Shown here: piece by piece, positions 8,538 through 63,272 of the stretch
Numbering within the stretch: position 1 is the stretch's first letter
How the letters are laid out: every line of letters begins with the position of its first letter
From: Obrimoposthia wandeli
Lineage: Eukaryota
Direction: 5' to 3'
DNA: 64,000 nt
NCBI GenBank assembly: GCA_977020255.1
Contig: CDROCS010001811.1
Location: forward strand, 62,001 to 126,000
Translations under genes and position numbers: made by a program
Notes under the pieces: generated by a model
Database searches by the model: none
The model's input: the letters and a program-made list of their open reading frames with translations, nothing else
What the model was told of the DNA's origin: nothing

Positions 8538-8568
8538 TATATAAGATTCGACAAATTAGAAATCAGTT
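8538..8568 (+). promoter_or_regulatory. TATA box plus TCAGTT initiator of pPolB
   Basis: TATATAAG at 8538 and TCAGTT at 8563, about 25 nt apart, just upstream of ATG 8591. The same TTTAGTATATAAG context recurs at 28221-28233. Confidence 0.6.
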
Positions 8569-8590
8569 CTTCTACAAACAAACTTAGAAA

Positions 8591-12621: not shown

Positions 12622-12659
12622 TTGTTTTTGTATGTTTGAATTTATATGTCTCAAATTTA

Positions 12660-16261: not shown

Positions 16262-16498
16262 AAAAAGTACTATTTGAATGTTTCAATCGTCGATCGCAAC
16301 TTCAAAATTGACCTAGATCCATCCACATCTGTTGTGGAGTTCAAGAGGAAAATTATGCTGAAAGCCACCATCACCACGGGAAACATACAACTCATTGCAG
16401 AAGCCAAAACGATGGAAGACTCCATGAATATCATTGACTATGATCTGGATTCTGGATCCACTATTCAGTTGATTATCAGCCTCCCTGGGGCTCTCTAA
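16262..16498 (+). CDS. Terminal ubiquitin-like exon of poly-Ubl paralog C (upstream exons not in window)
   Basis: Acceptor TTCCTTTTCAG|AAA is phase 0. The 237-nt length equals the gene B last exon. KKYYLNV...DYDLDSGSTIQLIISLPGAL* aligns with SSYSLLV...DYAIDSGSTIQLFTTMAGGR*. Confidence 0.8.
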   Translation, partial: KKYYLNVSIVDRNFKIDLDPSTSVVEFKRKIMLKATITTGNIQLIAEAKTMEDSMNIIDYDLDSGSTIQLIISLPGAL

Positions 16499-34579: not shown

Positions 34580-35032
34580 ATGAATTTAAATATACAGTTC
34601 CTCACAGAAGAAATTAATCAACATTTTGAAATACAAACTACTGTTCAACAATTGATCGAGTTTGCCAGAAACTATTTTAAATTGCCACCTGATGAGGAGA
34701 TTTATATAAGTCATAACCGAGCTGTTCTATACGAGTCAAAATCTTTAAACAAAATAAGCAATCTCCAAAATGGCGATACTTTGACAGTATCTTTGATGCT
34801 TGTGAAGAAAGGTAATCGGTTGAATATTGAAGTTCAAATCCAGCAAAGGATTATAAAGAAGTTAGTTACTGATGACATAAAGGTGGACGAACTGAAGAAT
34901 TATCTCTCCACTGTAACCAAACTCAGCACGGAAGCATTGACGATCAAATATGGCGATCAATTACTTGAAGCTGACAGACCACTTAAATTTTATAATATTA
35001 CAAACAAATCCAAACTGATTATTCCATATATG
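34580..35032 (+). CDS. Gene A exon 1: two tandem Ubl domains
   Basis: Two beta-grasp-like repeats (…KSLNKISNLQNGDTLTV…; …IKYGDQLLEADRPLKFYNITNKSKL). Donor ATG|GTAATA. Paralogous to 62805-63272. Confidence 0.8.
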
Positions 35033-38000
35033 GTAATATTATTTTGAAGTGAATTAATTGTTTATAAAAGTTGTGTGTCAGGATCATAAAATTTATAATT
35101 AAAACAAAATATAATTGTTATGAATTAATTATTTGATTTAAAAAATTTCTTATATTTGAACTTGATTCAGTGGTAATCTATTTGGAATGTTCTCTTGTTA
35201 ACTTAATTATTTTATGTTAAATAATGTACTCCAAAGTATTGTTAGCAGATTGGTACAGGAATTCATCATCACGGTGAAGTATGGTGAACGATGTGTAGAT
35301 CTCCTCGTCTCGAGTATTCAAACAATCGAGACCTTGTACAAGATGGCAGCCAAAAAGCTTGATCTAGTATGGAGCGAGGTCAATTTGTCGTTGAGGGCTG
35401 ATCACCTATCTGACTTCTCCCGTTCCATCATCGATTACAACATCTGCGAGGGCGACACTCTCATAAATCAGGTCTAAGAACTGTTACATAACAATCTCCA
35501 TTATCGAATTAGTAAACTGTAGTACATAACATACTGATTCCCACTTTTTATATCCTCTGATAATAAATCACGGAACACCAAAATAAATAAAATGTCTTAC
35601 GTAAGAGATGTGACAGTTGGAACAGACAAATCACTTGTAACACAACACTCAGGGAGAAGGGCGGTGCAAATGGGTAAACAAACATACTTAGCGTCACGAT
35701 ACTTATTGCATTTGGCACCTTAACTGAATGTTTGGCTCATCCCACATCGCCAGTTCTGCTTTCCAAAAATGGACCACTAGGCATTCGTATTAAATCGTGT
35801 GACTTTAATGAAGAAAATCTTCCCTGCTTTGGCTTCTTAATCTGGTGGTAAACTTCGCCTTACAGGTGTTTCGGTACTAATACAAAGACCATTACATTTC
35901 ATAGGCTTTAAATGCCTTGAAGTAGTACCTTTGTTGTTGTACACTAATTTTATTGTCTCGTTCTTTAGCTATCCAAATTTTCCCAGAATTGTTCTAACTA
36001 AGTTCATCTGGGATTTTAAGTTTGTAATGATCTTTGGTTTTAGGCATTTTGGACAAAACGATTTTCATTTTTCGACACTCACAAACAATTTTGTCGTTTT
36101 TATTTTTAGGCAGATTCTATATTCCCATTTTCTTCTACAAATGAGTTATTATTCTGTTGTATAACTTTTTATCTGTTTTTTCTCAATTATTTTCCAAGGA
36201 CTAAAAATGTTTAAAACGTTTAAATTTGGCTTAATCAATGAAAGAAATAGACTGTTGAGAATTAAAAATACAATAAAAAATGTACTTCGGATTATGTAAT
36301 AAGTGTTGGCCATGCACTAGAAAATACGATAATTGGTCATTGAGACCTTTCTGATGAGTGCCTGTTGCACCAGAAATAGCGCGAGAATGCCTTTCTTTTT
36401 GAAAGTTTTTAGTACAAATTTCATCGACCAACATTTATATAAATGCGAAGTCTTTTAGAATGATTTCTCAACCATTTTCTGTAGGACTGTCGCATCCGGT
36501 TCTTGGATGAAGATGGCCAGCGACAATGCTATCTAAGTGTTTGGCAACACTGCAAAGTACAAGTTATAAAGAAGAAATTACGTGCATCGTTCCAGTTGAC
36601 TGCACATCAAGTTACACTTAAGTTTGAAGAAAAAAAGCTAGATCGAAACAAAAGTATTTCAGTTTACAAGATTCGGCACCGTGCCATAGTTCAAGTAAAG
36701 ATCAAAGAGCTGGTAAGACTAATTTTTTGTGCTCATGTGACTGCATTCGAATTAAAAAAAAATAGTCATATAGTAGGCATATATTGTCTAACTCTAACTT
36801 TTAAGACTAAATGGATACGTTAATATGCTGTTAAATTTACTTTACAAATTAAAAATGATCATTTATACTAAAAATAGAATTGGAACATGAGATGTAATTT
36901 CCATTGTTAAATCAACAAAAGCATTCTGGATACATCAAGCCTGATCTTCTTGTGACTTTACATATTTTAAGATTCAAAATGATAAATTAAAAATCAAAGT
37001 AATCATAACTTTACTTTCTTCTTTTATTGTATGTCATTTTTATTTATTATTTGTTTATTTTGCGCAGAAATTGTTTTATGATTCGTTTAAACAATTGTTC
37101 CTTTTTATATTATATAAAGAAGTTGTTAAATAAAATTAAATACATAATATAACACAAACTATTTTACCATACTGGTATATTTTAAAATACCCACTCGGTA
37201 CGCTTTCTCGTAATTCTAAATTATCTTTCGTAGTGTAAAGAATTATTTTATGTTCCATAAAGTAGATAATTATTAATTCTTGAGTTTGTTAATACAAATT
37301 TTCTAGTTAAAAAAATCAAGTAGGAAAATGAGTATTAATTTAATGAGTAATGAGTACATTTCAACACTCATCATAATCTAGTAAACAAAATGTTTACTAA
37401 ACAAGAAAAATGACTGTAAATTTGTAGCATGTTTTAGTGATTTAAAATAGTACTTGAGAAATTTTTGTGGAACGGTAGTGCTTTCTTGTTTGACCAATAG
37501 GAATTTTTTTCGCTAGACACTGATATTGTTTTAAAGATGATTTCCAAAATTTCGGATCAAATAAATTTTTCTGAATTTAAGTTTGAAAATCTTTTGTACC
37601 TAGTAATGGATATTTTCATATACAGGCGAACCTCGGATGAAGTCGTCTCGTTTAACATCGTCTGAAGAAACTGTTTTTCTAAAATAATAAAGTTTCTTTC
37701 AAATATTAAAATTTAGATCTTCGGAGTACGGTTTTTGAATGGAAAATATAATTGATGATATTCATTATTATATAAAATAAATTGATTTCCCATCTGTTTT
37801 GATTTAAAAAATATAATTAATTAGAATAATTAGGATCTGACAATGTAATACAAATATAACATAAGCTTGTGACATAAGCTATATAAGCTGACTTTAATCT
37901 AATGGCATTCGATGATATTGGGGAGTTATTAGATTTGCATGGAGAATATATATCCAATGAGGATCTTTTTGAATTGAACCAACAAGACACGAGGGATCAG

Positions 38001-39343
38001 GAATCGATCAAAACAAATTCGGATTAGGAAACTTCAAAAATAAACGTACAAATGTAATAATTTTAGAAGCTTTTGCTATGATTTAATCAGGAATGGCAAT
38101 AGGAAACGAATATGATCCAAATATAGAGTGTAATATAAAATATAATCAATTAATCATTGAATGAATTTATCCATATAAAGAAATATTAAATGACAACAGC
38201 CAGAAATCAACTCTGGTGACTCCTTATTATTTTTTAAAATTTCAACAAAGGAAATAGAAATCGAAAAAATATCCGTTGAAAAGAACTTGAGTAAATAATG
38301 TTATATTAAGTACTTTTTGCCATAAATTTTAAAACTCCTATTTCAGATTTCAATACCATTTTGTTCATTTTCACCTTCTTAATACTTACATACATATATT
38401 TTCCTATCTTTTACGAGGTTTACCTGTATTGATAATTATAATTTATGTATAGCCTTTCTACGTACGGACACAATTATTCGAACAGTTCCTTTTGGGATTT
38501 GGAAATATCTCGCCACGCACGTAACAGCATGGATTAAGTGAATATTTGCATTCCTGGGCACCCATTAATAAACATGATTTTAAGAACGTCGTAGAAATTT
38601 AACCGAATCGATAAAATGTTAATATTTTAATATAAAAACAAAACTTACGATTTGAAAATACTGAATTTGTCAGATTTGAAAATGAGATGGCTCACAAACT
38701 CCTGAATGCTTTTTTAACTGGAATTTAAAAAAAAAAATATCAAGGAAGCAAATTTAAATATATAAATCACATGATAATTTATTTTAAAATTGTCGTAGTT
38801 TTTTATATAAAAAATATGTTAAAGTCTTGCTTGTAAAAATTTTCAAAGTACTGATAAGCAAACCGAAGTCTAAAAGCTTTTTATTCTGTCCAAAATATTT
38901 ATTTCATTTGGAATATAAATCTGTTCCATTACATTGAATTACAATTTAATTCACTAGATATACTTTATAAGGCATTTGAATGCTTATATACTATTGTCAT
39001 ATTTAAGTAGATAATTAATATCAATTAATTAAAATAATAATTTTATGATTTGGGTTGAAAATATTTATAACCCCCTTAACAGATTGACTACAAACTGATG
39101 GTGCGATTAGATGCGAAAACCTATTGTCTGAAAGTCGATCCCAATATTTTAGTGAAAGAGTTAAAGACAATTGTGAGCAATCGAGTCGGTATCACGTCAG
39201 AAAGAATTATCCTAGTCTACAATGGAGAGGTGCTCGAAGAAAAATTGACGCTATTGGAACTAGAAATCAAGTCGAATAGTGTTATTCTGCTGCTGAGTAC
39301 AGTTTTTGGGGGCAGAACATTTGAAAGATATATTTTTATCTAA
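34580..39343 (+). CDS. Poly-ubiquitin-like gene A: exons 34580-35032, 35259-35471, 36485-36712, 39083-39343; five divergent Ubl domains, 384 aa, ending GG-RTFERYIFI
   Basis: All junctions are GT-AG and phase 0. Exon types and sizes mirror gene B. The 5' start is provisional and the donor at 35472 (CAG|GTCTAA) is weak but positionally conserved. Confidence 0.78.
35259..35471 (+). CDS. Gene A exon 2: Ubl domain (213 nt)
   Basis: CAG|GAA acceptor. EFIITVKYG...IIDYNICEGDTLINQ. Same length as the exons at 53722-53934 and 49639-49851. Confidence 0.75.
36485..36712 (+). CDS. Gene A exon 3: Ubl domain (228 nt)
   Basis: TTTTCTGTAG|GAC acceptor, CTG|GTAAGA donor. Gapless 76-aa alignment with 48261-48488. 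Confidence 0.82.
37623..38426 (+). mobile_element. Internally deleted Tigger/pogo element in gene A intron 3
   Basis: TIRs CAGGCGAACCTCG / CGAGGTTTACCTG flanked by TA. Tigger C-terminal remnants DDIGELLDLHGEYISNEDLFEL and EAFAMI...YDPNIE. Confidence 0.8.
39083..39343 (+). CDS. Gene A last exon: Ubl domain with diglycine and C-terminal extension
   Basis: CCCCTTAACAG|ATT acceptor, phase 0. RIILVYNGEVLEE...VFGG-RTFERYIFI*. Confidence 0.85.
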   Translation: MDYKLMVRLDAKTYCLKVDPNILVKELKTIVSNRVGITSERIILVYNGEVLEEKLTLLELEIKSNSVILLLSTVFGGRTFERYIFI

Positions 39344-39806
39344 AGACAAATAACTGATACTAAAAAAACTAAACTTAACATTCGAATGTTCATCTAACAA
39401 ACCTTGTCTATTATCTTTATGATTGATCTCCACTTATAGATGGTTAATCGATCTAATCTATATATTTGAACCCGAGTGTTTGGTAAAATATCGCTCCATC
39501 CCAATCACGCCTATAATTTGCAATATATTAAACTATTATTTACGATACATGTTGAAGAGTAATTTTTTATTTTTGCAATTGTTAAGGCCAGAAATATACA
39601 TTTTAATTAATATATCAGGAGAGGATCCATTCTAAATTAAAGAAATTGATTATAAACAACGTTTATGTATACATATACATATATACATATTTAAAAAAGA
39701 AACAAATATTATGAAATAAAAAAATGAAACTGATTACAATTTATTACATACATGAATCTACAAATGATAAAAAAAATGGTCAAAATAAAGCAAAGAAAAT
39801 AAATAG

Positions 39807-41084
39807 TTAAAACATAGGGATATGAGCACGATCAATTTTCCACATAGGTAGCTTTGTTCCAATATCAACCTTCTTATAACCATAAAACCTAATTGTTATC
39901 GTCCATTGCTTCTTTTTCGGAACCGCGCCAATATTCATTTTTCTTCCATATTCATATACATATGATGCAGCAGCTCCTCGGATAAAAAAATCCGTTCTTA
40001 TTGAAAGTAAAATTTGGAACTGCCTTTTCAACTTTCTGTTTTAGATATTGAACATCTGGTTTTTGAATATTTGATAAATAATAGCTGAACTTTCTTCTTT
40101 CAATTGTCACAGGATTTACTAAAGCAATCGGTTGAGCCTTCTTCAAGAACCTGACTTTGTATTTAAAATATATTTTCATTTCTTCATACATATTCTTATC
40201 CTAATCTTCAAACATGTCTTAATCTTCATAATCGCTCAGTATTTGTATCTCCGTCATTTATTGGCAAGTTTAAGTAAGGCATATACTTCTCGAACTTCCA
40301 TATCGTGCCTATGTACTTTTCAGTGATGTATTTTTGATGTACTTCTTCTATACCATGGGATACAGTCTTAGGTGATGGTTTGTTGTTTCTTTTACACCCA
40401 TATCGACAACAGTTAACTTCACGCTTACTATATATGGCTTTAACATTCAAGCATACTATTCCAGATTTGTGTATAAAGCATTTCCATAAATCACAGATCC
40501 TGGTTTATCATTGATTCTTACAAGCTCAGTCCTAGCAATTGTGGTCTGGTTGTGGAGATTGGCACTGATTCCTTTGTTATCGTCACTTGTGAGTACGGTA
40601 TTAATATTACACTTCTGAATCCAAATTACTACTTCATAATTTCCACCATCTGTAGACCCTCTAGGGATTATAATTTCAAGATTCAACTCCTACTTGATTT
40701 TCTTGTGGGCCTCAGTATACCTTGCCCACTCATTTCTGTCCGTTACTTGAATGACGTTTCATTTACGGCTTGAGCCTGGCTACTCCAGAAGTCTTTGCAT
40801 TCCGGGTTTCGTTTGTTTACTAAGGAGATTAGTTCAAGTCTAAAGACTTGTTGTAATCCTCCACGGTCTGCATTCGCCATTTTGAAAACCTGGATGATGG
40901 CCTGTATAGTATTTTCATTGGAGAATTTGTAATTATCGCTCAACATTTGTTGGTTATCTTCCATCATTGATAATTTCTTTGATATGAATTCATTTATAAT
41001 AACTTGTTCCCCAATGGCTCTTTCTTTATAATAATTTGTAACAAATACATGAAACTCATGGGTTAATATAACTAAATCATTCAA
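39807..41084 (-). pseudogene. Long, decayed copy of the unknown Polinton-associated gene
   Basis: Consecutive broken minus-strand ORFs ending ...KFSYYLSNIQKPDVQYLKQKVE...QWTITIRFYGYKK...LPMWKIDRAHIPMF*. Homologous to 54900-55500 and 28490-28790. Confidence 0.75.
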
Positions 41085-41164
41085 TTTGATTGGACTGAAT
41101 CCATTTTAAAATTATTGGAAGAAATATTTCATTTTTCAATCATCCAATTATAATAGGTTTGCAA

Positions 41165-42105
41165 TATATTTACAAGAAATAATCAATAAAATAATTTCCA
41201 GTAAATATTCGTCCTCTATCTGTTAAAATACTCCTAGGTTTTCTAAATTTATATATCCAATTTGTCTCGAGGGCTTTAGTAATTGTTATTTCATCTTCTT
41301 TCGAGATTGCTAATAGTGATACCAGTTTTCTAAATCGATCGATTACTATCAACATATATTTCTTTTTAAATTTTCCTTCCTTCATGTGGGCTATATCGAC
41401 AATTATTTGATCTTTAAAAAATTTCTTTGATTATAGAAATATATATTTCTTTTGTTCTGCTTATTTAAATTTTTCTTTTGGCACAGTAAACGCACTTTGA
41501 TATACATTCTTTTATTTCTTGAAACATTCCTTTTAAATATAAGTTATCTTTCATATAGTTATAAACATTTTGTATTCATAGGTGACAAATATATTGGTGA
41601 ATTTCATTAATAATTTCATTAGCGTTTTTCGGAGGTATGACAATTAAATCTGTAAAGTTTTGTTCAAAATAAAGGATATCATCACAGAGTTTAAGTTTCT
41701 CTATTATCTGATAAATCCAACTTATTTTACATTCTTCTGATAAATCCTTACTTTCCAGTTGGAGGAAAACTTTCATTTCTTTCACATGAATATCTTATTG
41801 TTGTATTTTCCTTATCTTACTCAAGAAGTTGTCTTCATTTAGTGAGTTAATATATCGTATTTTAGATCTCTTCTCTTGTGCATCTATATGTTTAGTTTCA
41901 CACTGAGCACATACTGTTTCATTTAATCTTGACATACCATTGGCATTACCATGGTCAATACCTTCACGATGCTCTAACTTAAAATGATCTGATAAATTTG
42001 CCAGCCATGTTTGAAATTGAGAACTGATTGGTTTTATCGTCGTTCTTAAAAATACTAATGCTTTATGATCTGTTCTTGCCAAATATTCTGTTTTATACAA
42101 ATATT
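41165..42105 (-). pseudogene. pol: Gypsy pol fragment (RNase H end plus integrase)
   Basis: RTDHKAL...W...LEHREGIDHGNANGMSRL, HHCC-region remnant, and VIDRF...PRSILTDRGRIF rve core. Confidence 0.85.
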
Positions 42106-42144
42106 GTTTGGGGAATTGTTAGCGTTATAAATGAAACATAAATA

Positions 42145-45239: not shown

Positions 45240-45476
45240 CTAACGACCACCGGCCATGGTGGTGAAGAGCTGGATAGTGCTGCCCGAGTCGATAGCATAA
45301 TCCGATACGTTGGAAGAATCGTTGAGGGTCTCGCCAGCGTGCATGAGCACCAGATGATCTGTGGTTATATTCATCTTCTCCTTGGCCAACTTCTTCAACT
45401 CCGACACGCGCATATCACGATCCAGCATCAGATTGTAGATCCGACCCGCCGCATTCACCAGAAGACTGTAGCTCGA
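45240..45476 (-). CDS. Gene B last exon: Ubl domain ending GG-R
   Basis: SSYSLLV...LMHAGETLNDSSNVSDYAIDSGSTIQLFTTMAGGR*; 237 nt. Confidence 0.85.
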   Translation of the reverse strand, partial: SSYSLLVNAAGRIYNLMLDRDMRVSELKKLAKEKMNITTDHLVLMHAGETLNDSSNVSDYAIDSGSTIQLFTTMAGGR

Positions 45477-48400
45477 CTGCACGACAGCACCATACTCACT
45501 GGCGAACCTCCGTGTTACAGAACATGTTCACAAAACCTTTCAACTTTCTGGCTTTGTTGAAGTATGTCGGAAGTCTATTATGTGTATGCACAAGATGTTC
45601 ATGTTGTTTCCGAGTTTAATGGTATATTTTAATGATAATCGGTCACAAACTTTCTCAATTTTGTTGTCACGAATTTGTTAATTCATATTACAAGCAGATG
45701 TATCGAAAATAAAAAGAATGTCAAGAATTATCGAAATTACAATAATGGTTAGTTGCTTAATAGTTACCTTTACTGTATCAGAAAAATATAAAATGAGGGG
45801 ATTTTTAGCGAATTAAAGTAAAAATATATACAGTTTGAAACTTTCCATAATTTTTAAAAAATCCTGATGTCGAAGAAAAAAACGTGTTTCTGAGAAGCGG
45901 CGTACAGTTATCATTTGAGATATATGTGATGGCACTGTTTATAATATTTCAAATTATTTGCTTTCTTAAGTGGTTTAAAAATTTGATTTTAAATAAGGTG
46001 AATATCATGTTGAATTGGAACATAAAAGTTTTTAAAAATGATGCTATTCTTTAAATAAATAGAAGCTGCTAAAATTAATTTGAACATCTAAATAATTGAA
46101 ATGGATAATATTGTAAATCTTAGCTTTATTTATATGAAAAAATAGTATAATTTCTTTATTAATATAACCTATGTGCATCATTGTAGAAGATATTTCCTTC
46201 AAATCAGTTATATTAAAAATTTAAACAAGATTAATTCCATAATTAAGTTCAAAATTTATACGTTTTTACACGTATTTAGCAGTAATCAATGTTACAAATA
46301 ATATCTAAAAGATAGGTTTTTATTTACAATTAGTTAAATTATTATTCAAAGGGGACCTGAGGGGATTATTGCCATGTAAAATTATTTATAGATTCATATT
46401 AAATAAATTTATATATTTATGTAGCAAAATACCACATAAATTAAGATGCAATGTTTTATTTTTAATCTTTATTCTTAACCCTAACCCTAAACTTCTTAAA
46501 GATATTTTATTATATTTGGCGGTTTGAAATATCTTTTTTTCTCCATATAATCTTGCAAAACTTTAGGTAATGAAATTTAAACTCTTGAAATCGAAAGCTG
46601 TTATTGATCAACTTCTTTAAAAGCTGAAATTTTGAGGGTCACATTATTGCCTGCGGTAAGAACTTGTGTAGTTTGAAAATTTATAATTTATAAGTAATGA
46701 GTAATTTTCATAACTTTTCTATTCTTTATTTTTGGGTTGTTTTGAGAGATTTAATTTGGTTTTCAAACGCTACTGTCAACCATAAAACACAAGTTTATAT
46801 ATACTTCTAATTCATTTCTAACCTTAAAACATTTTTAAGAAATAAAAAATAATAATATTTGCAATAAATATAATTTCATAAATGACTACACGAGAATTGT
46901 CAGATCTTTTATTCTGAAATAATTTTGGGGTTTCTCGATGGAGTTATTTGCTTTGTTCACGAATCTGATATTTTTATTTTGAGAAAACAAATAGTTTTTC
47001 AGGAAAATTCTTTTTATTATATTTGTAAAATCCAGCAGAAATTAGCCATTATTCTTTCATCAGCTAAACCTTGATAACCATTTCTATTTTGTTAATAGTT
47101 TAATGAAAATATTCACAAATTTCATCAGTAATTTTCCCTGAATCTTTAAATTAATCACTCAATATCTTATAACGATAATGCATAATATAAAAGAAGCTGG
47201 CAATAATATCATTCACGGAAATTTACGAACAACAAGTGATATAAAATTTACCTAAAATGTTGCTAAAATATCAATATCTAAGAGTACTGGCAAACGTAAA
47301 CAATAATTTATTAAATATTATTGTTATTCAGATCCTATTTGGATATCAGTTTCAAATAAAATATTAAATCTTTGTACATGGTTTTACCTAGTAACGCTTT
47401 ATTATTCATTGAGAAAACCCTATAAATCATACAAGGAAAATGTGAATTTAAATTTTATTATTATTCAATTACTATCAGAAAAAACTCTTTTATTCGTTTA
47501 CAAAAAAAGTATGATGAAGCAAACAATATTGTGATCAGGTTTGAAGGTAAAGGAAAATTCTGTTACAAGTGTGAAAATTAAAATGTGAAAGTAAAAATAA
47601 ATTAAAATTAAATTTGAAACAGACAAAATAATCTAAAATAATAATATATATTACGGTTATTTATGTAAATTGGAAGATATTGGATTTGAATGGGAAGTTA
47701 AACGTCAAATTTATTAACTCATCTGTATAATTAATTTCAATAACATAAACAATGACATTCATTAAATATATACATACTTTTACAAATAAATGTAAAACAT
47801 GAAATGTTATTCTAGCATCATTTAAAAGAATTTCAACTACAAAAATAGTTCAAAGATTATGCTTTGTAGTGATTGTAAGTAGTGTTTTTTGATTTTGCTT
47901 AAGGAAATATACAATTAAATTATTACTTATGAATACAATATGATACTCTTATTTATAAGTAATATATTTTGAAAAGTAAACAGAAACTTTACAATAACTT
48001 TCACAGCAATGTAACAGTATTCTCAATGACCGTGTAATTCAAATACGCTTCAAAATTTAATTTTAACTTATATTTTAATGTATGGTGTAATAAAATAAAA
48101 TTTACAATCATTTAAATAGAATTTTAAAATAAGGAAAACATCGGTAAATTGGGAACTGTCGAGTGCAAAATATTATTTTTATTATCAGACGGAACTACTT
48201 CGTCTTAAATTGATATATTCAAATACTGCCACATGGGTTACCCAAAAAATCCATACTCACCATTTCTTCGATGTCCATCATGATTACATCCTCGTTCTTG
48301 ATCCCGTACTGCAATATTTTGTCTTTCTTGTCCAATTTCTCATCGTAGTAGAACAACACAATCTTATGGGAATTGAGATTCAGGCGAAATCGAATTTGGT

Positions 48401-51400
48401 CGAGTAACTCTGATACATAAGATTGTCTCCAGATCTTTATATCAACACTGCGGCTCCCATTGATTTCTTCCATCTTCATTATGAAATCCTGAATTATCAC
48501 AAAATATTCATAATCGGGCATAACTAATAACTACCAATACACTACCCTCATTTCTTCTCTTTATTTTATCAATCCATAAAATATTTTAATATCACCAACA
48601 TTATATAGCCCATACATATACATCACACGTGTGCAATAAATCAATAATCATCTCTTGGCAATTCTAAAAAAGAAAGCACTGTAAATCGCATTTTCTATCT
48701 GGTGACCACTTATTGAACTATTCAAATTTCAAATAAGCTGATGAAGCATTTAATCAACAACCCATATCATTTTGTTCACAAATTACAAAATTTCAAGTCA
48801 AACTCTTTTGAATGGGTTAAATGTTTAACAAAATTCTGTTATAATTATAATTAATTTATAGTCTTTAAAATATAAAGATTAATTAACCTGGTGTAAAAAT
48901 ATTACGATATTATGAAAGTGGTAGCTGAAAGTAATTGAGTGTGCAAAATGAAAGAAAATCAATGACAATCATGTTAAAATTTCCAATATCAAAGTCATTT
49001 ACAACGAATATATTCTGAAGAATATACAATACTTTCAGAGAAACAAATTATTCCAGAAAATAAATTGTAAGTTTATCAATTCCAATCCTAAATCAGATTC
49101 GCCGAAATATAAAAAATAGCAGATATAATTACCAGTGGAATAAATAATTCTTTTTTAAGAAGGAGACTGATAGTGGAGCCAAGAAAACAGAACGATTAAA
49201 ATAACCTTTCAAAATTTTCAAAAGTACTTTTAGCTGTACTTAAATCCGGTTCAGCATTGACTTTCCTTTTTCGGTTTTATAAACTATTTTAATAAGTAAA
49301 TAAACAATCATGAGCGACTAGAACTTACAAAATATTTCGATTTGTAAATTAAATGAATTATTTTTATGCTATTCTGAAAGTGGCTCAAGTTTAAAACCAC
49401 AAATCACAAACTACAACATAATCATGTTTATTTGATGTTTAAGTAAATATATCTTCAAGGCGCATTCTTATATATTCATATATATTAGGCATATGTTGTA
49501 AGTGTTTTTTTCCTACCCTATGTAAAATATATATTACGGTTATTTATGTAAATTGGAAGATATTGGATTTGAATCGGAAGTTAAACGTCAAATTTATTAA
49601 CTCATCCAAATGCATTAAAATAAAATATAATCATTCACCTTGTTGTAGATAGTATCATTGTCTTTCAAATTGTAGTACATGACAGATCCGACCGTTACGA
49701 CCCAGTGTTCATCTTTGTAGAAGAGATTCATCTCGCTTGTATTGAGATCCAATCCGCGCGCAGCCTCGTCATATACTTCTGCCAAAGTGAGCATGCACCC
49801 TATTTTCAGCCGCATTTTGATATTTTTGTAGCACATATTCACTGTAATATCCTGAAAATGATTAAATACATAATATTGCCAATCTATATAGAATGATTTG
49901 TACTTTATCACTATTTACACCTTTAATATAAATGATTGAGTAAATTTAGTTATTTTTTACTGTTTATGTACAAAGGAATTTAAAATTTTACTATGAATCT
50001 GATTTCAGCAGGATATATTGAAAAATAGAAATCGCAGAAGAAAGTCACAGCTTTATTTTATGTTAAACTCTAATATTTCAAACTGATGAACTTAATGAAG
50101 GTTTTTAAAATTATATAGTTTCAATGTATTATGTAATTTGATAAATGCATAATATTGAAATATCCAATAGTGTCCAAAAAGTCTCTATTAAGTTAAAGAT
50201 ATCGTCAAATATGTTTAATTTTTTGAAAATAAATTTACTGGAGAAATGCTGAAAATTTCTGAGGCGAAATGTTCTGAAACCATTGGGTCCTAAACGTGGA
50301 ATGGTGGATAGAAAAAAGAAAGTGGTGTTGTACCAAAATGCGGTTTAAATTATAGAAATCTGGTGAGTCTTTGTGGTATGTTTCTGCAAGTCGTAATTGA
50401 TTTTACCGATACACCTGAATGAATACATCGGTGTAAAATTATGTGCTTTACAAACAACATTAGCAAAGTTTCAAAATACAAAAAACATTGAATAGAAAGA
50501 CAAATATATTCCAGTTCTAAGTAACTGGCGTTTGATTGGAGAAAATTCAACAAATCTCCATTATTTAAAAATGTTTTGTTCTCTAACAACATATATTCTT
50601 TTATTAGTAATTGTACGTCTCACTTTAAAATTTTTGATTTTCCATCTGACTTGCTAATCTTCATTTCTGAAATTTTCTAAGAATCTATACAATGAAATAC
50701 GAGTGTCAAGCTCTATAAAGATTAATAATTCTATAAGTTTCCTTTAAGACTGTAATATTTCCAGAAGACTTGGCTATTTCTTTGATATCTTAAATTACAA
50801 TTCTTCCTTCTAAATGCGCTTGATCGAGTTCATGCACAGACTGATATTGATTTATCTGGATATTGATAGTACAAGTGACAGTAAAATATGTTGCTTTGCA
50901 AGTTCTTTCTGAGCATTTTCTGTTTAGTTTTGATTCAGTAACTCGGTCTTTCAAAAAAGAAAATCCATATATGGGTTAAAATTTAAATTGGAATATATTC
51001 ATAACTTTTCAGTTTGACAAAATATCATTAGTTGACATATACATGAGGTTTCAGTGATATGAAGTAAACCCTTACTAAACTTAAGACACATTTGATTTTA
51101 ATAAATTTATTAAAAAAATACCTATTTTATACCAGAATGTTTAGAGATTTTTTTTCTCTAAATATTAGAATAATCAATTTAAATAAAATTAACTTAATGA
51201 AAATTGTTGTGTTTTAACATTTTTACTTGACACCTACCTATCTTTTCTTAAATGTAAAATATTGAGAAATATAAGAGCAATGTGACAGTGTTGGTCGCAG
51301 ATGAGGAGGAAGAGGAAAACTAAAAAACTGCCCTCGTCCTGGCTAATTAAATATTGGAGAACCCAGTATCTAAGAAACACTCCAAGAGTTAAAATCAGAA

Positions 51401-54400
51401 GAAGAAAAAGCTAAAAGAAGGACATTATGAGAACAATCGATTCACGGCAAAAAATAAGAGTTTGGACCTACTTATGTGAAGTGTAACCAATCAGTTAAAA
51501 CCCCATTAACCCATCATGGTCCTTTTATTTCTTAGTTTATCTAAAATCTTAGACCCTAACGGTCTCTGTCTTATTTAAAATTTACAGAGCCCAAACCCAG
51601 AAATTTAGGATTTTGAATAGTTAACGAATATTCTGTTTGACTTATATTGTATTTTACTTATAAATCTGTGTTTGATTTGTGTAAGTTTAATTTGTGAAAA
51701 TATATTAAATCTCTATAAGGATTTGTGTTTTTTGAAGGAAAACAACTACACATAGAAACAACTAACCTTCAGATTTCGAGATTACACGAGATGGGCTTTC
51801 CATAAAAGTCTAAAGTATCCTACAGTTGTGATAAAAAGTAAGTGTCCACTTACAATTTTTATTGGAATTCTTAATTTTTCTAAAATAACATATATATAAT
51901 CAATCTAAGTTAGTATATCTATAAACTATTAATTATAAAATAAAACAATAATATAACTATATTTTTTGTAATCAGGAAAAAAATAATATTTAGAATAGAA
52001 TAAGTAATACACTACAATCAAAATTAAGTGTTCACTGCAAAGTAAGTTATAAAACAACGTTTAAACATTTATTTAGTAATTATACAGCAAAGGTTCTATA
52101 AAAGTTTCAATATTTATTATTATTTGCTATTAATATTTATTATTATTGCCTTTACATTTAATTATAGCCTGAAGCCGTATCCGGACAGAATTGTAGATAT
52201 TACTTATTATTGCATCAGGTATTTCATCGAATTCCTACTTCATTGAATCAAATAATACTGTTATTCATCGAAATATTTGTTTTTTCATGTTTCTTTTAAT
52301 GATTTCCCAGATATTTTCAGTTATGTAATCAGAAACGTGAATTATCATACTTTCATTAATTTGTTTAAGAACTGATATTTAATGAACATAATATAAATTG
52401 TGTTGTGAAATCGAAGTCTTGAATTATGTCTACGATAGAAAACATAACTTTTTCAATGATATTTATGTCTGGGGAATGTGGAAAACGAACAAAACGTATT
52501 TCGTTACTATCCAGATAATAATTAGTTGTTCTGAACTTATGAGGTGGCGCACCATCCTGTATTAATATTGAGTTGGAATTTTTAATTTATGACCACACAT
52601 ATTCAAGTATTCCTTGATAGTTGCCAGAATTAACATTACCGGGACACGAAATTATTGAATGTTTAACGTATCCGGTGATAGCACGCCATACACAAATAGA
52701 AAGTCCACCAAATTTCACTGTTTTCAATGTAGATTTCGATTTAAACCTTGAATTGGCAGGTCTTTGAACAACTATACGAAAATATTTTTATGTTTGAAAG
52801 CGAGCCTCATCACAGTAAACATAGTTTTTCCAATCTGAAATGGAAATTTCTTCGTGCGCTTTACACAAAAGGAAGCGTCATCTAATGTTCTTTTTTTCTG
52901 CAAGTGTTTTTTAGCTGGTTTTCTGGAAAAAATACTGTAGCAAAAATATCGTCTCGCAGTGATTAATGATTTTTTGTTCTGTAAATTTTTGCTCTTTTTC
53001 TGCTAGGAAAGGATCAGTTGCAGACTTTCGGTACAATAAACGAACTTGTTTTTCCGATATTTTTCGCGGTCTACCTGGTTTTGATTTATTTTTTAATATA
53101 ATTAGTCTCTTTATACTTTTTATATATTTTTGACACAGTAGAATGCCCACCAAGATTGAATTCTATCGCAATCTTACGATAGGACACACCGTTGTTTATT
53201 TGCGTTACTATTTTCATTATAATGTCTTGATTTATTTTAATAATTGCTGAAAAAGAAAAAAAAGAAAAATTAGTTTTACGATAAAATAAATAAATTATTA
53301 CTTAATCATTACAAGACACTTACTTTTGATCACTTTTGTTTGATAATGAAACTGCTTAAAAATCACAACAATGTAATAAATTACTTCTACTTTTATATTT
53401 TTAAAAATCCAGCAATATATTTATAATATTAAAACAAAAGAAAGAATTGAAAATTGCATAAACAAATTTAGTTAAATATATTTTATAATTTATTACAATG
53501 TGCACACTTACTCTTGATCACAATTGTATAAGAAGTGAAACAACTCTAATCCCAACACAAAATAACAATAGTAAAGGCCTAAAAAAAATATAATCATATG
53601 ATCTTAAGAATAAATAAATGAAAATAATTAAACAAAAAGAAGTTTTATAATTCTTTTTCCTATTATAATCACTATCTTAATTATGAGAACTAACTACCAA
53701 TAAACCAAAAGCTAAACATACCACATTGCTCAAAACATCGCCATGTTTGAAGCCGCTGTCCACAACGTAGTTGTACATGTTAAGAAGATATCTGTTTTTG
53801 AATATTAGATTCAGGTTTCTCTTGTCGATTCCGAGAGTAGTAGCTGCTTGCTGGTAGATGTGATGCACCCGTTGGTAATTGCGCACGTGCACAGAGACCT
53901 TGCGTACACCGTGCTGAACTTCTAGAATCAGTTCCTGAAAGAAAGTGTAATAGATTAATTAAACAATTCAGTCGGATTTTTACAAAAATATTTTCACATG
54001 CAAAAATGATAATTTGATATTATTCTGGTAAACTTCATAATTGAAGGATTCTAAATTAAACGCAATAATAGCAATAGGTAGATGTATCCGGTCTTATCCA
54101 CTCCATCTTCCTATGGGTAGAGGGTACTTATCTATTTTACAAATTTCGTGCATCTGTGTATGTAGTGAACTGTCACATCCGACTTTCAAGGATGAATCTA
54201 AGTACTCAAAAAGTGATATAAAACAACACCAGAATCCAGATATATGGATTGACTATATATAGATATATATCCAGATATATAGACGAGATTTTAGATGATA
54301 ATTTTGTACGAATAAATTACTACATGTTTATGTCTGTTAGGAGTAAATGTATTGAAATATTCCATATTTCTTCATCTAAATGTATTGAAATATTCCATAT

Positions 54401-60400: not shown

Positions 60401-63272
60401 TGAAATACAGAGAGCTATTGATCCAGTAAGTATTAGAAGTCTGATCGAGGTGTGAACTGAGCTCATACTTAGGACCAAGCCAGGGGAATCCAACTGCTCA
60501 TGGAAGGAGATTATTCTGACTGAGGAAGACCTGACGGAAAGGATCAGCAGTCAACGACGAAAATCGGTGGGTTGTTGGAAACCAAAGTTATTTTCGTTAA
60601 AGTAATTAGTAAAGTAAAAGCCTATAAAAGTTGTATTCGTAAAGTAGAAGTTTCATCAAAGTTGTATTCGTAAAATAGGAAGCTTGTCAAAGAAGTTGTT
60701 AGAGTAATAGATTGTAAAACTTTAAGTTGGTAAATGTTAAAGCATTAACATTAAGTTGTTCAAGTACTTATAATATTGTTAATTTGTTCAATTGTAAAAT
60801 AATTCTGACATTGATAAATTGCTAAACAGCTGTTAAAGATAAAGATTGTAGAAGTTACATAACAGAACTGAGGAAGTAAAATTTCCACCCGAATTACCAG
60901 AATTTTCATAGTGTTACCATTGTTTTATTGATATATCCTATAAATTAGAAAAAATAAAGTAGTAGTAAAATAGACAGACGAACTTCGCTATAAAAAGAAA
61001 GTGTCCTACTCGCGAGTTAACTTACTAACATATAGGTTAGCCGTAAGTTAAATCACGTAGTGGTGTTCCAAGCTCTGTAAATTCAGAGTAGAATCGTTAG
61101 TGTCGTTTGGCTTAGGCTCTGTTTATTTATTTTTAAGTTTTGATTTTACAAGACCCTTTTTCCGAACTAAACTCTAAAAACAACCGGTTAACCGCCTAAG
61201 CCCACACCACACAACACTAGTTTTAGGGTCCCTTCTAGTTATCCTGGAAACAACTCCTTGTACATACCACAAAACAACATACATAAAACCTTCAGATTTG
61301 AGACTAGAACTAAGTAAAGTAAGAACAGGTAGGCCACATCCATATGTAAACCCTATCGCTATAGAACTCAAATTGGGAGCCTCCATATGAAGATCTAGTT
61401 CATTAAAAACCTATAGATTTTCATGTTCAAAAGTGAGTAGTTAATTTTTCACAGATATAGAAAACCTATAAGTAGTATTATGTCAATAAAACACTTTTTT
61501 TTTAGAATTTCCTTACGCTTACGATGGTAAAATAATAGAAAAGTAAAGAATAATTTATGTTTGGATAAATCTAAGATTAGGAATGTTTATATTGGACCAT
61601 GGCTGTGCCGAGACAGTAACTACTGCTCTTATAAAGATTATATATAAATTCAATGTATGGTTATCAATAAAAATTATAGCATGTGATACGACAAATGTAA
61701 ATTCTGGTATGAAAGCTGTAAAATTTCAGAAAATTTTGTGTCGTGGTAATGATGTTCCAATATACTTAGGGTGTTAACATCATATACTTGATAGAGTTCT
61801 ACGACTTAAAATAGACAATGTCATTCCAACAGACTCTAATTCACCGAATATGAATTATTCTTTCATAAATGAGCTCGTAAGTAATTACGAATAACTTCAA
61901 TTAAGTTATTCAACTATTGTAAATGCAGAAAATTACAGGAATATGGTTGGAAAGATGATATAAAATTCTTATACGTTTATGTGAAACATTTAAATATCAC
62001 GATAAAAGTAAATTATGGCCTGAAATTGATTGAAAATGCTTCCATCCATTCATCAAGCTCGGTATTTATGTTATTGTTGCATATTTTTAATAGAATCCTG
62101 ACAATAAATATTACAACAAATTTGGAGAATAATATGTGGGCTATGAGTAAATTTATGGTTTAGTTATCAAATATTTCAACCAGAAGCCAAAAAAGGAATT
62201 AATTTTTAAAAAATTTCAGATTTTAAAAAAGCAAAATAACGTTTACATAAACGCTGGCAATCAATACCACCTCTTTTTATTTTTCCGAAGTAATAAAATG
62301 GCAGAAAGCTCAATAAAAGATATGCAAGCTCTCATGTCAACAGGTGTCACTGACAACTATCTTTAAATTAGATTTTTACTTCTAAATTGATGTAGTTATT
62401 TACAAAATTCGTATTATTCATTTTGTTATAGTATTATCTAGATCATTGAAATCATTTAATTAAACATTAAATCATGTAGTTTTGAATATAAATAAACTTG
62501 AATTAAATTTAATCTGCGCATGAATTTTTTAAATGCTTTTAATTGCGCAGTAGCACAAAAAAAATTTCGCCTCAGTAAAAAATAGTAAAAATAATTCATA
62601 AAACCAAATTTCAGTTCAATTAAACAAACAAAATAAACATTTTGATTACATAAAAAATCTTTAAATTGACCTGTATATTTTTCTAGTTTCCCACGAGTGT
62701 TATACTCCATGTTTGAAAATGACAACAGTCTATAGTCAGATAATCAGAGCATCTTAATAAACGTAACTTAAAATTGCAGTCCATGAAGTGTAATGACAAC
62801 TCACTCTGTCATCAACCTCCACGATGCAGTCGCTTGTCATCTGGTATTTTCCGAGCGGTTTGGTGCCGGTGAGGTAGATCTGGCCATAGCGGAGGTTGAG
62901 GCTGCTAGCATTGAGAAAGTGCAGCTTTGCGATGTAGTCAATGAGTGTAGACGTCAGCACATCAACAGACACGAGTTTGCGCCTCACCTGAGCACCATAC
63001 TTGATATTGATGTTCAACAGAGCTCCCTGGCTCACCAGAGGTACAGTCACTGTCACCACATTGTTGTCTCCGAGTCGTAGGAAACTCTGCAGCGATTTGG
63101 CAGGTGCCATCTTCACTTTGCCGAACAGTAGGACAAGTTCTTCCTCGTCCTTCTTCACACCGAACTTCTGGCAGGCACAGTCCACCAATACTTGCACCAG
63201 ATCGGCTTCTTTGACCTGCACTGACAGAGTTTGCGCTTGGAATTTCAGCTGCACATCCATCGATTGAGACAT
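45240..63272 (-). CDS. Poly-ubiquitin-like gene B: exons 63272-62805, 53934-53722, 49851-49639, 48488-48261, 45476-45240; six divergent Ubl domains, 452 aa, ending GG-R
   Basis: All junctions are GT-AG and phase 0 (donors GTGAGT, GTATGT, GTGAAT, GTGAGT; acceptors TTTCAG, TTTCAG, ATTCAG, GTGCAG). Exon order is colinear with gene A. Confidence 0.8.
48261..48488 (-). CDS. Gene B exon 4: Ubl domain (228 nt)
   Basis: ATTCAG|GAT acceptor, ATG|GTGAGT donor. KLDKKDKILQYGIKNEDVI. Confidence 0.82.
49639..49851 (-). CDS. Gene B exon 3: Ubl domain (213 nt)
   Basis: TTTTCAG|GAT acceptor, AAG|GTGAAT donor. Paralog of exon 2. Confidence 0.78.
51823..53526 (-). mobile_element. Decayed Tc1-like transposon in gene B intron 2
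   Basis: ~27-bp TIRs (CAGTTGTGATAAAAAGTAAGTGTCCAC / GTGCACACTTACTCTTGATCACAATTG) with TA flanks. GRPRK, FTDEA, QDGAPPH and HSPDINIIE motifs. Confidence 0.9.
53722..53934 (-). CDS. Gene B exon 2: Ubl domain (213 nt)
   Basis: TTTCTTTCAG|GAA acceptor, GTG|GTATGT donor. ELILEVQHG...GFKHGDVLSNV. Confidence 0.82.
54290..55500 (-). pseudogene. Decayed copy of the unknown Polinton-associated gene plus downstream ORF
   Basis: ORF 54997 (FSYYLSNIHK...YLKQK) and flanks match 39760-40200 and 40960-41160 with ~700 bp missing. ORF 54320 matches 28950-29330. Confidence 0.75.
55780..56735 (+). pseudogene. Older Polinton relic: TBP-like, MCP C-terminus and protease fragments
   Basis: INLYEIAEKMTKECMFEPEFF (TBP-like); RLPQFVLI, TFILAQNFDI and GVFDSELQI (MCP); KFNGVY...GGYIINTH...EHWIAIYV...FDL...CEHLCILWL (protease). 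Confidence 0.85.
57005..58170 (-). pseudogene. Decayed pPolB C-terminal half
   Basis: IHRAISFSQ...FYKLKSKSIFG, CEIKIAAGDTDS and KIALSSND...AYGY match the intact pPolB. Confidence 0.88.
58470..59200 (-). pseudogene. Decayed Chapaev/CMC-like transposase
   Basis: VRNFLNKSKAQCYKKLVNELL, CNMSIK, PHNLGDVREDKGEVFHQDIK and NYCWKWKRD resemble the NLGxxSDEQGERFHQDI...DYCW motif. Superfamily assignment is from memory. Confidence 0.6.
59887..61415 (+). mobile_element. Second, diverged copy of the solo-LTR-like element
   Basis: Colinear similarity with 30783-32189 at both ends (e.g. AATTAAAAAATGAATAAATA..., AAAACCTTCAGATTTGAGACTAGAA). Confidence 0.75.
61583..61990 (+). pseudogene. Decayed hAT-like DDE transposase fragment
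   Basis: IIACDTTNVNSG...IYLGC*HHILDRVLR (CxxH-type motif). Confidence 0.6.
62805..63272 (-). CDS. Gene B exon 1: two tandem Ubl domains
   Basis: Paralogous to 34580-35032 (KSL...L..GD/NN..V.V..LV..G..LNI; LRYGQ...KPL..Y). Donor AGA|GTGAGT. Confidence 0.82.

What the first reader, a model, noticed from the sequence alone, without database searches (positions are those of the whole stretch)
34580..63272. Hidden family of spliced poly-Ubl genes: 5-6 divergent ubiquitin-like domains ending in a single diglycine
Seen in sequence: the scattered short Ubl ORFs are bounded by phase-0 GT-AG sites and assemble into two convergent genes with matching architecture. Both have a di-Ubl exon (453 vs 468 nt), then 213-nt exon(s), a 228-nt exon (gapless 76-aa alignment, shared W20, H41, KLD, Y61) and a terminal exon with GG at positions 76-77. 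Internal domains lack LRGG, and the domains are highly divergent from each other and from ubiquitin. Established: canonical polyubiquitin has near-identical repeats each cleaved after GG, whereas ISG15 and FAT10 are di-Ubl modifiers conjugated through one C-terminal GG. Inference: these encode an uncleaved penta/hexa-Ubl modifier, an extended ISG15/FAT10-like tag or pre-assembled chain mimic, from a fast-evolving lineage-specific family that may be stress- or immunity-related. Automated ORF calling would miss it.
Basis: partly seen in the sequence, partly recalled or inferred. Interest (0 to 1): 0.88.

Follow-up and report, generated by a model that had tools for sequence, protein, structure and literature searches.

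The report
Two spliced five/six-domain ubiquitin-like genes
Two neighbouring spliced genes in an AT-rich animal-type genome encode proteins made only of five or six very different ubiquitin-like domains, with one ubiquitin-style Gly-Gly at the very end; they may be a large ISG15/FAT10-like protein tag, but neither expression nor attachment to targets has been shown.

Summary
All nine exons sit at the stated coordinates, are phase 0, and have GT donors and YAG acceptors. They assemble into a 384-aa gene A (+, 5 Ubl domains) and a 452-aa gene B (-, 6 Ubl domains).

- **Ubl fold:** Pfam, AlphaFold2 and Foldseek support a ubiquitin fold for every exon class.
- **Shared architecture:** the domain types are position-by-position reciprocal best hits between A and B.
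- **Coding signal:** exons have raised GC and GC3. Identity between paralogous exons runs codon position 2 > 1 > 3, with synonymous sites saturated.
- **Ubl-only proteins:** a stop lies just upstream of each ATG, and several exons have no ATG of their own.
- **Single GG:** each protein has one GG dipeptide. It is in exact register with ubiquitin G75-G76 and is followed by 9 (A) or 1 (B) residues.
- **Third locus:** an orphan terminal-type exon at 16262-16498 ends PGAL.

No sequence relatives turned up in any collection searched, and I found no literature on such proteins. The modifier reading is plausible but untested. "Fast-evolving" and "immune or stress-related" are unsupported. I class this as a new variant of a known kind (tandem-Ubl modifiers) and rate interest moderate to high. 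The scan had not recorded this family on other DNA.

The parts
34580..35032 (+). Gene A exon 1: ATG plus two Ubl domains (151 aa)
   Evidence: Open frame, donor GTAATA, in-frame stop just upstream of the ATG. Pfam TUG-UBL1 3e-7 and ubiquitin 7e-4. The AF2 model matches ISG15 and linear di-ubiquitin over about 150 columns, E 1e-9.
35259..35471 (+). Gene A exon 2: one Ubl domain (71 aa, 213-nt class)
   Evidence: Phase 0, CAG acceptor, GT donor. AF2 model pLDDT 71 with beta-beta-alpha-beta...beta topology. Foldseek to ubiquitin TM 0.76.
36485..36712 (+). Gene A exon 3: one Ubl domain (76 aa, 228-nt class)
   Evidence: Phase 0, TAG acceptor, GTAAGA donor. Pfam Rad60-SLD 2e-6 and ubiquitin 8e-5. 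Gapless alignment with B exon 4.
39083..39343 (+). Gene A exon 4: terminal Ubl, GG at 39308-39313, 9-residue tail, stop
   Evidence: Pfam ubiquitin 1.6e-12. Aligns with ubiquitin 7-76, so its GG corresponds to G75-G76. No GT between the GG codons and the stop.
62805..63272 (-). Gene B exon 1: ATG plus two Ubl domains (156 aa)
   Evidence: Stop codon one codon upstream of the ATG, donor GTGAGT. Matches A exon 1 at E 1e-14. Pfam TUG-UBL1 5e-4.
53722..53934 (-). Gene B exon 2: one Ubl domain (71 aa, 213-nt class)
   Evidence: Phase 0, CAG acceptor, GTATGT donor. Pfam Rad60-SLD 1e-3. Matches A exon 2 at E 3e-5.
49639..49851 (-). Gene B exon 3: second 213-nt-class Ubl domain (71 aa)
   Evidence: Phase 0, CAG acceptor, GTGAAT donor. 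No Pfam hit, but matches A exon 2 at E 4e-6. It is a row of the alignment whose model has the ubiquitin fold.
48261..48488 (-). Gene B exon 4: one Ubl domain (76 aa, 228-nt class)
   Evidence: Phase 0, CAG acceptor, GTGAGT donor. Pfam Rad60-SLD 7e-8. Matches A exon 3 at E 2e-7.
45240..45476 (-). Gene B exon 5: terminal Ubl, GG at 45246-45251, one extra Arg, stop
   Evidence: Pfam ubiquitin 1e-10. Gapless alignment with ubiquitin 9-76, GG corresponding to G75-G76.
16262..16498 (+). Orphan terminal-type Ubl exon (locus C): 237 nt like B exon 5, ends PGAL then stop
   Evidence: Pyrimidine tract plus CAG acceptor in phase 0, open frame, GC3 0.52. Closest to B exon 5 (E 4e-12, 37% identity). No upstream Ubl exons in the window. 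A Polinton lies immediately upstream.

Best explanation
These are two real, ancient paralogous protein-coding genes. Each is spliced from phase-0 exons that carry one Ubl domain each (two in exon 1). They encode cytosolic proteins of 45 and 52 kDa made only of five or six abutting, mutually divergent ubiquitin-fold domains.

The most likely mode of action is as precursors of an oversized ISG15/FAT10-type modifier. A ubiquitin-like C-terminal hydrolase would remove the short tail after the only Gly-Gly. The exposed glycine would then be activated by a non-UBA1-type E1, and the whole uncleaved chain would be attached to target lysines as one unit.

Shown here: the gene structure, the Ubl folds, the conserved domain order, the coding constraint, and the position of the single GG with its tail. 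Inferred: transcription, processing, activation, conjugation, and any biological role.
For: **Gene models**
- All exons are open and phase 0, with GT donors and YAG acceptors.
- Paralogous exons have identical lengths: 213/213/213, 228/228 and 237/237 nt.
- Exons are 33-52% GC with GC3 up to 0.70, against 21-33% GC in introns.
- Identity between paralogous exons runs codon position 2 > 1 > 3, with dS saturated. This points to long-term protein-level constraint.
- Exons A3, B2, B3 and B5 have no usable ATG, so they cannot be stand-alone genes.

**Ubl-only proteins**
- An in-frame stop lies directly upstream of both ATGs.
- No other Ubl exons occur in the window.

**Fold**
- Pfam hits.
- The AF2 model of the 213-nt class matches ubiquitin at TM 0.76.
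- The di-Ubl exon matches ISG15 and linear di-ubiquitin at E 1e-9.

**Architecture**
- The domain order is conserved, with position-wise reciprocal best hits.

**Modifier features**
- Each protein has only one GG.
- The GG is in register with ubiquitin G75-G76.
- It is kept in both paralogues despite 32% identity in that domain.
- It is followed by 9 or 1 extra residues. From established knowledge, this resembles ISG15, NEDD8 and SUMO precursors and the one-residue cap of polyubiquitin genes.
- The tails (VFGG, MAGG) have a hydrophobic P4 residue as in LxGG sites. They have Thr where ubiquitin has Arg72, which predicts that UBA1 is not used (inference).
Against: - There is no transcript, junction or protein evidence.
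- No relatives were found by sequence in any collection, so conservation of the GG across species could not be tested.
- No E1, E2 or protease partner has been identified.
- The first Ubl of exon 1 is modelled poorly (pLDDT 38-65).
- The third locus ends in GA rather than GG. Either the motif is dispensable in some copies or that copy is decaying.
- Many Ubl-domain proteins are never conjugated.
Confidence: 0.45

Rival explanations
1. The genes are real and expressed, but the proteins are never conjugated. They would act non-covalently as multi-Ubl scaffolds, proteasome or receptor adaptors, or decoys for deubiquitinase-like or viral/transposon LxGG proteases. The terminal GG would be a leftover or only a processing site.
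For: - The evidence for real genes is the same as above.
- Non-conjugated tandem Ubl modules exist, such as the OASL C-terminal di-Ubl and NFATC2IP, both among the structural hits.
- Ubiquitin's recognition residues are replaced in the terminal domains (I44 to M, K48 to E, R72 to T, R74 to A in B).
- Locus C ends in GA.
- A Polinton with an adenain-type protease sits in the same window. Other first-stage notes mention transposon-borne Ubl, OTU and adenain genes in this genome (unchecked).
Against: - The sole GG of each protein falls exactly at the G75-G76 position of the last domain, in two paralogues with saturated divergence.
- The short post-GG tails are what modifier precursors have. A pure scaffold has no need for either feature.
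Confidence: 0.3
2. The Ubl exons belong to larger genes or to different transcript structures. Examples are further non-Ubl exons beyond the window or in the long introns, exon-skipped isoforms as the main products, or A/B exons used differently from the proposed models.
For: - No transcript data are available.
- Gene B has introns of up to 8.9 kb, full of transposon remnants.
- All internal exons are symmetric phase 0-0, so skipping any of them keeps the frame.
- Other notes on this genome report very short (about 40 nt) introns (unchecked).
Against: - An in-frame stop lies immediately upstream of both ATGs, with no AG in between.
- Both terminal exons reach a stop right after GG plus tail, and gene A has no GT between the GG and the stop.
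- Exon order and lengths match between the two genes.
- No other coding-like Ubl exons occur in the window.
Confidence: 0.12
3. The loci are unexpressed relics (pseudogenes) stranded in a transposon-rich region.
For: - The region is dense in Polinton, gypsy and other transposon fragments.
- Locus C is a lone exon without the GG.
- No hit for these proteins was found in any protein collection.
Against: - Nine of nine exons are intact, and every splice site is intact. The per-exon probability of staying open by chance is 1e-5 to 6e-3.
- The exons show a coding GC3 signature and a pos2 > pos1 > pos3 identity pattern.
Confidence: 0.08

Closest known systems
ISG15
   Same: - Several ubiquitin folds in one uncleaved polypeptide.
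- A single C-terminal GG in register with ubiquitin G75-G76.
- Made with a short C-terminal extension.
- It is the best structural match of the di-Ubl exon, in the PDB and Swiss-Prot libraries.
   Different: - ISG15 has two domains, not five or six.
- Its tail is LRLRGG, against VFGG and MAGG here.
- There is no specific sequence relationship. Ubiquitin itself scores better than ISG15 against the terminal domains.
- ISG15 is known from vertebrates (own knowledge), whereas this genome looks invertebrate.
FAT10 (UBD)
   Same: An uncleaved tandem-Ubl modifier with a GG tail that lacks the arginines of ubiquitin (CYCIGG, own knowledge). It shows that an Arg-free tail can be activated by a non-UBA1 E1 (UBA6; PMC4359146 abstract).
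   Different: - FAT10 has two domains only.
- It has no C-terminal propeptide.
- It gives only a weak sequence hit (E 2.5e-4).
Polyubiquitin precursor / M1-linked linear ubiquitin chain
   Same: Head-to-tail ubiquitin folds with essentially no linker. Gene B has a one-residue cap after the last GG, as polyubiquitin genes do. Polyubiquitin is a strong structural match.
   Different: Polyubiquitin repeats are near-identical and each ends in GG, so the protein is cut into monomers. Here the domains are 17-37% identical, five types are kept in a fixed order, and only the last has GG.
TUG/ASPSCR1 N-terminal product TUGUL
   Same: The first domain of both genes hits Pfam TUG-UBL1 (3e-7 and 5e-4). 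From own knowledge, TUGUL is a two-Ubl unit released by cleavage after a GG and attached to a target.
   Different: No GG follows the second Ubl here, and there is no UBX domain or long C-terminal region. The hit probably reflects generic beta-grasp similarity.
Uncharacterised multi-Ubl proteins of other eukaryotes (e.g. AlphaFold DB A0A0R3UMS1, 338 aa; P0002, P0004)
   Same: These are proteins made of several divergent Ubl domains. A0A0R3UMS1 starts with a di-Ubl that aligns 1-151 to 1-151 at 24% identity, the same level as A versus B.
   Different: - No significant sequence similarity.
- The listed hits P0001-P0005 do not end in GG.
- The sequence of A0A0R3UMS1 could not be read with these tools, so its C-terminus is unknown.

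Membership tests
Ubiquitin-like beta-grasp domain superfamily | Sequence-profile match to ubiquitin-clan families | tested here: met
   Ubiquitin-clan matches: above Pfam's gathering score for 5 of 9 exons (A1, A3, A4, B4, B5); below it for B1 (20.6 bits vs 23.3) and B2 (19.0 vs 23.8); A2 only YukD at E 0.04; B3 none. A2 and B3 join through A2-B2-B3 similarity and hhalign to the other classes.
Ubiquitin-like beta-grasp domain superfamily | Beta-grasp fold | tested here: met
   The AF2 model of the 213-nt class matches ubiquitin at TM 0.76. The di-Ubl exon matches ISG15 and di-ubiquitin over about 150 columns. The first Ubl has low confidence only.
Conjugatable (type I) Ubl modifiers | C-terminal Gly-Gly at the position of ubiquitin G75-G76 in the last domain | tested here: met
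   Alignments with ubiquitin. It is the only GG in each protein.
Conjugatable (type I) Ubl modifiers | Synthesised as a precursor with a short extension after GG, or ending in GG | tested here: met
   There are 9 residues after GG in A and 1 in B, then a stop. Actual processing was not tested.
Conjugatable (type I) Ubl modifiers | Cognate E1/E2 and covalent conjugates in vivo | not testable with these tools
   No enzyme genes occur in the window, and no genome-wide or experimental data are available.
ISG15 | Exactly two Ubl domains ending in LRLRGG | tested here: not met
   Five and six domains, with tails VFGG and MAGG.
ISG15 | Specific sequence relationship to ISG15 rather than to ubiquitin in general | tested here: not met
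   Ubiquitin chains score better than ISG15 against both terminal domains. There are no ISG15-family hits in Pfam.
FAT10 | Two Ubl domains, with GG as the last two residues | tested here: not met
   Five and six domains, and residues follow the GG.
Polyubiquitin | Near-identical ubiquitin repeats, each ending in GG and cleavable | tested here: not met
   Inter-domain identity is 17-37%, with a single GG per protein.
TUG/UBXD9 | UBL1-UBL2 followed by a GG cleavage site and a C-terminal UBX domain | tested here: not met
   Only the UBL1 profile hits. There is no GG after the second Ubl and no UBX domain.

The most novel reading that the evidence does not exclude
A previously undescribed class of protein modifier: a genetically hard-wired, non-cleavable chain of five or six different ubiquitin folds. 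It would be conjugated as a single 45-52 kDa unit through one C-terminal glycine by a dedicated E1. Chain length could be set by exon number or exon skipping. Standard K-epsilon-GG proteomics would not see it, because the last tryptic site lies 14 (A) or 43 (B) residues before the GG.
Probability: 0.3. Interest if true: 0.85.

Novelty: new variant of a known kind. Interest (0 to 1): 0.6.

Why it matters
To my knowledge, the described uncleaved tandem-Ubl modifiers, ISG15 and FAT10, have two domains. Both are vertebrate immune-system modifiers.

A family with five or six fixed, non-identical Ubl domains and one conjugation-type end would extend that principle to a pre-built chain in what appears to be an invertebrate. 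It would raise concrete questions:
- Which E1 accepts an Arg-free tail?
- What reads such a chain?
- Does exon number tune chain length?

If the proteins are not conjugated, they remain an unusual Ubl-only family whose domain order has been preserved through saturating divergence. Either way the gene models are precise enough to be tested directly with RNA-seq and tagged expression.

Tried and rejected
**Homologue searches, all empty or uninformative**
- A full HMMER scan of 1.84 billion representatives with the exon-1 profile gave 5 weak, unrelated poly-Ubl proteins, and none from this genome.
- A word-indexed search with the terminal-Ubl profile gave nothing.
- Two metagenome scans and two viral-contig scans gave nothing.
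- The scan's own index, searched by sequence, gave nothing.
- The ESM Atlas returned only generic Ubl clusters.

**Organism identification.** I tried the Polinton integrase. The best hits were 71% identical, anonymous metagenome proteins, so the organism stays unknown.

**Shared promoter.** The upstream 150 nt of A and B are no more alike than random window pieces. The ATCGAT-type motif is not enriched convincingly.

**More Ubl exons.** None were found for gene A, for locus C or elsewhere in the window.

**Stand-alone single-exon genes.** Rejected, because several exons have no ATG.

**dN/dS.** Not usable, because dS is saturated or undefined.

**Literature.** Five full-text searches found nothing on penta- or hexa-Ubl single-GG proteins. 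A sixth search, for the accession A0A0R3UMS1, also found nothing.

**Not done.** I did not search with or fold the full-length spliced proteins. A spliced product has no reference form in these tools, and long sequences may not be typed in.
Full report
**What is in the sequence.** The window is 29.6% GC and rich in transposons.
- All nine have lengths divisible by three.
- Each of the seven introns starts with GT. Six of the seven donors have a purine at +3.
- Each intron ends with CAG or TAG, in most cases preceded by a pyrimidine-rich stretch.
- Gene A (+ strand) joins 34580-35032, 35259-35471, 36485-36712 and 39083-39343 into 384 codons.
- Gene B (- strand) joins 63272-62805, 53934-53722, 49851-49639, 48488-48261 and 45476-45240 into 452 codons.
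- The two genes converge, with their 3' ends 5.9 kb apart.

**Is it more than chance?** Several independent measures say yes.
- At this window's stop-codon density (0.070 per codon), each exon has a probability of 1e-5 to 6e-3 of being open by chance.
- Searching each exon against the six-frame translation of the whole window pairs the exons by position. A1 matches B1 at E 1e-14, A2 matches B2 and B3 at about 1e-5, A3 matches B4 at 2e-7, and A4 matches B5 at 1e-10. Nothing else in the window matches except one extra exon, described below.
- With the di-Ubl exons split in two, every domain's best non-self match is the same-position domain of the other gene; for B5 the orphan exon C scores marginally higher (128) than A4 (124). 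Smith-Waterman scores are 65-128, against a shuffle maximum of 51.
- Paralogous exons have identical lengths, 213/213/213 and 228/228 nt, and align end to end without gaps.

**Are these real coding exons?**
- Exons are 33-52% GC with GC3 up to 0.70, while the introns are 21-33% GC.
- Between paralogous exons, nucleotide identity is highest at codon position 2 (0.51-0.62) and lower at position 1 (0.30-0.60; the order reverses slightly for B5/C5). It is near random at position 3 (0.21-0.35), and synonymous distances are saturated.
- This is the pattern of old duplicates kept under protein-level constraint. It is not the pattern of decaying copies. It also means that 'fast-evolving' cannot be read from the low identity.
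- Exons A3, B2, B3 and B5 have no usable ATG ahead of the domain, so they cannot be independent genes.
- Both first exons have an in-frame stop directly upstream of the ATG and no AG in between, so no coding exon can be spliced on upstream.
- Both last exons reach a stop shortly after the GG. In gene A there is no GT between the GG codons and the stop.
- The proteins are therefore Ubl-only.

**Are the domains ubiquitin-like?**
- Pfam gives ubiquitin, Rad60-SLD or TUG-UBL1 matches for seven of the nine exons (five above the gathering score). A2 has only a weak YukD match, which is also a beta-grasp family, and B3 has none.
- An AlphaFold2 model of the 213-nt class (alignment of A2, B2 and B3; pLDDT 71) has beta-beta-alpha-beta...beta topology. 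It superposes on ubiquitin at TM 0.76.
- In the model of the di-Ubl exon, the second domain is confident (block-mean pLDDT 83-93 over residues 81-150). The first domain is poor (pLDDT 38-65).
- Foldseek aligns about 150 columns of that model to ISG15 and linear di-ubiquitin at E about 1e-9. ISG15 is the top reviewed hit.
- Gene A therefore has five Ubl domains and gene B has six.
- B2 and B3 are both about 28% identical to A2 but only 17% identical to each other. The extra exon is thus an old duplication in B, or a loss in A. It is not a recent event.

**The C-terminus.**
- Each whole protein contains exactly one GG dipeptide, at 374-375 of 384 in A and 450-451 of 452 in B.
- The terminal domains align with ubiquitin residues 7-76 (A) and 9-76 (B, gapless in the printed alignment). 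The GG falls on G75-G76.
- It is followed by nine residues in A and by a single Arg in B.
- From established knowledge, this is how Ubl modifiers are made. ISG15, NEDD8 and SUMO have short propeptides, and polyubiquitin genes have a one-residue cap.
- The tails (VFGG, MAGG) keep a hydrophobic residue at P4, as LxGG protease sites do. They have Thr, not Arg, at the position of ubiquitin Arg72. They also lack Arg74 and Lys48, and Ile44 is replaced by Met in B.
- By inference, the ubiquitin E1 UBA1 would not activate them. A UBA6- or UBA7-like enzyme would be needed, as for FAT10, whose tail also lacks arginines.

**A third locus.**
- At 16262-16498 (+) there is a tenth Ubl exon of the terminal type.
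- It has a pyrimidine tract, a phase-0 CAG acceptor and an open frame. It is 237 nt long, exactly like B exon 5, with GC3 0.52.
- It is 37% identical to B exon 5 (E 4e-12), but it ends PGAL then stop instead of GG.
- No upstream Ubl exons are present in the window.
- The 12.7 kb immediately upstream is a Polinton. Locus C is therefore either a gene whose last intron has been invaded, with its other exons outside the window, or a relic.

**Relatives elsewhere.** None were found by sequence.
- A full HMMER scan of 1.84 billion representative proteins with the exon-1 profile returned five weak hits. All are unrelated poly-Ubl proteins without a terminal GG, and none comes from the window's own genes.
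- The word-indexed search with the terminal-domain profile, two metagenome scans and two viral scans were all empty.
- These collections are poor in animal genomes. Even the Polinton integrase of this window finds nothing closer than 71% identity. The blank therefore does not prove lineage restriction.
- The best AlphaFold DB cluster hit is a 338-aa 'Ubiquitin-like domain-containing protein' (A0A0R3UMS1). Its residues 1-151 align with residues 1-151 of exon A1 at 24% identity, the same level as A versus B. It is a lead to a possible relative, but I could not read its sequence.
- Five literature searches found no description of penta- or hexa-Ubl proteins with one terminal GG, and a sixth, for the accession A0A0R3UMS1, was also blank.

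**Interpretation.**
- I put the probability that these are real spliced Ubl-only genes at about 0.85-0.9.
- The best functional reading is a precursor of an uncleaved multi-Ubl modifier conjugated through its single terminal glycine. I give it about 0.45. It rests on one line of evidence: the exact placement and the conservation of the only GG, plus a short tail, in two paralogues with saturated divergence.
- The main rival, at about 0.3, is a non-conjugated multi-Ubl scaffold or decoy. It is favoured by the loss of ubiquitin's recognition residues and by the GA ending of locus C.
- Different transcript structures (0.12) and pseudogenes (0.08) are less likely, for the reasons given above.
- Nothing in the data speaks to stress or immunity.

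**Comparison with known systems.**
- The proteins work most like ISG15 and FAT10, which are uncleaved tandem Ubls with one conjugation end. They look like a hard-wired linear chain.
- They are not members of ISG15, FAT10, polyubiquitin or TUG. Domain number, tail motif, repeat identity and accessory domains were tested and not met.
- They do meet the sequence-level criteria of a conjugatable Ubl: the fold, the GG register and the precursor tail. The enzymatic criteria cannot be tested here.
- I classify the finding as a new variant of a known kind.

**A practical consequence, inferred from the sequence.** After trypsin digestion the remnant left on a target lysine would be 14 residues long for A and 43 for B. 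Standard di-Gly proteomics would not detect such conjugates.

Noticed in passing
window 16262-16498 (+): A lone terminal-type Ubl exon. It is 237 nt with a phase-0 CAG acceptor, 37% identical to gene B exon 5, and ends PGAL instead of GG. It has no partner exons in the window. A Polinton lies directly upstream, so this may be a third family member with an invaded intron, or a relic.
   Followed up: partly
window about 1-12700 (+): A Polinton/Maverick with an A32-like ATPase (2718-3182), an rve integrase (3860-4888), an adenain-type protease fragment (7644-7895) and a protein-primed PolB split over two ORFs (8645-11029, 11221-12621). The integrase's nearest database relatives are only 71% identical, all from anonymous metagenome or Logan contigs.
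   Followed up: partly
window 21533-24529 (+): An ORF of about 126 aa is repeated three or four times at a spacing of about 660 nt. The last copy continues into a 332-aa protein that matches the Monjiviricetes (chuvirus-type) fusion glycoprotein family at E 1e-26. It sits downstream of a gag-like ORF with zinc knuckles (20211-21329).
   Followed up: partly
window 28405-28728 (+), 39807-40191 (-), 54997-55263 (-): Three copies of one small ORF family sharing the motif FSYYLSNI(H/Q)K...YLKQK. One lies just downstream of gene A and one inside the 8.9-kb first intron of gene B. They are probably fragments of the small conserved Polinton gene that another first-stage note mentions.
   Followed up: no
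window 34553-34579 (+) and 63273-63300 (-): Both genes have a TTAG about 21-23 nt upstream of the ATG, followed by a similar short stretch (AATACACTGTGA in A, AATAAACTGTAA in B). This could be a 5'-UTR or trans-splice acceptor with a shared leader. The upstream regions as a whole are not significantly similar.
   Followed up: partly
window 40743-42100 (-) and 42751-43346 (+): Retroelement-like and transposase-like ORF fragments fill the 5.9-kb gap between the 3' ends of genes A and B. Pfam gave no hit for the two fragments tested.
   Followed up: partly
window 18568-18915 (both strands): A tandem repeat with a 48-nt unit gives long repetitive ORFs on both strands (unit peptide like HKRYYFIMKNGCSIL). 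It lies between locus C and the gypsy-like element.
   Followed up: no
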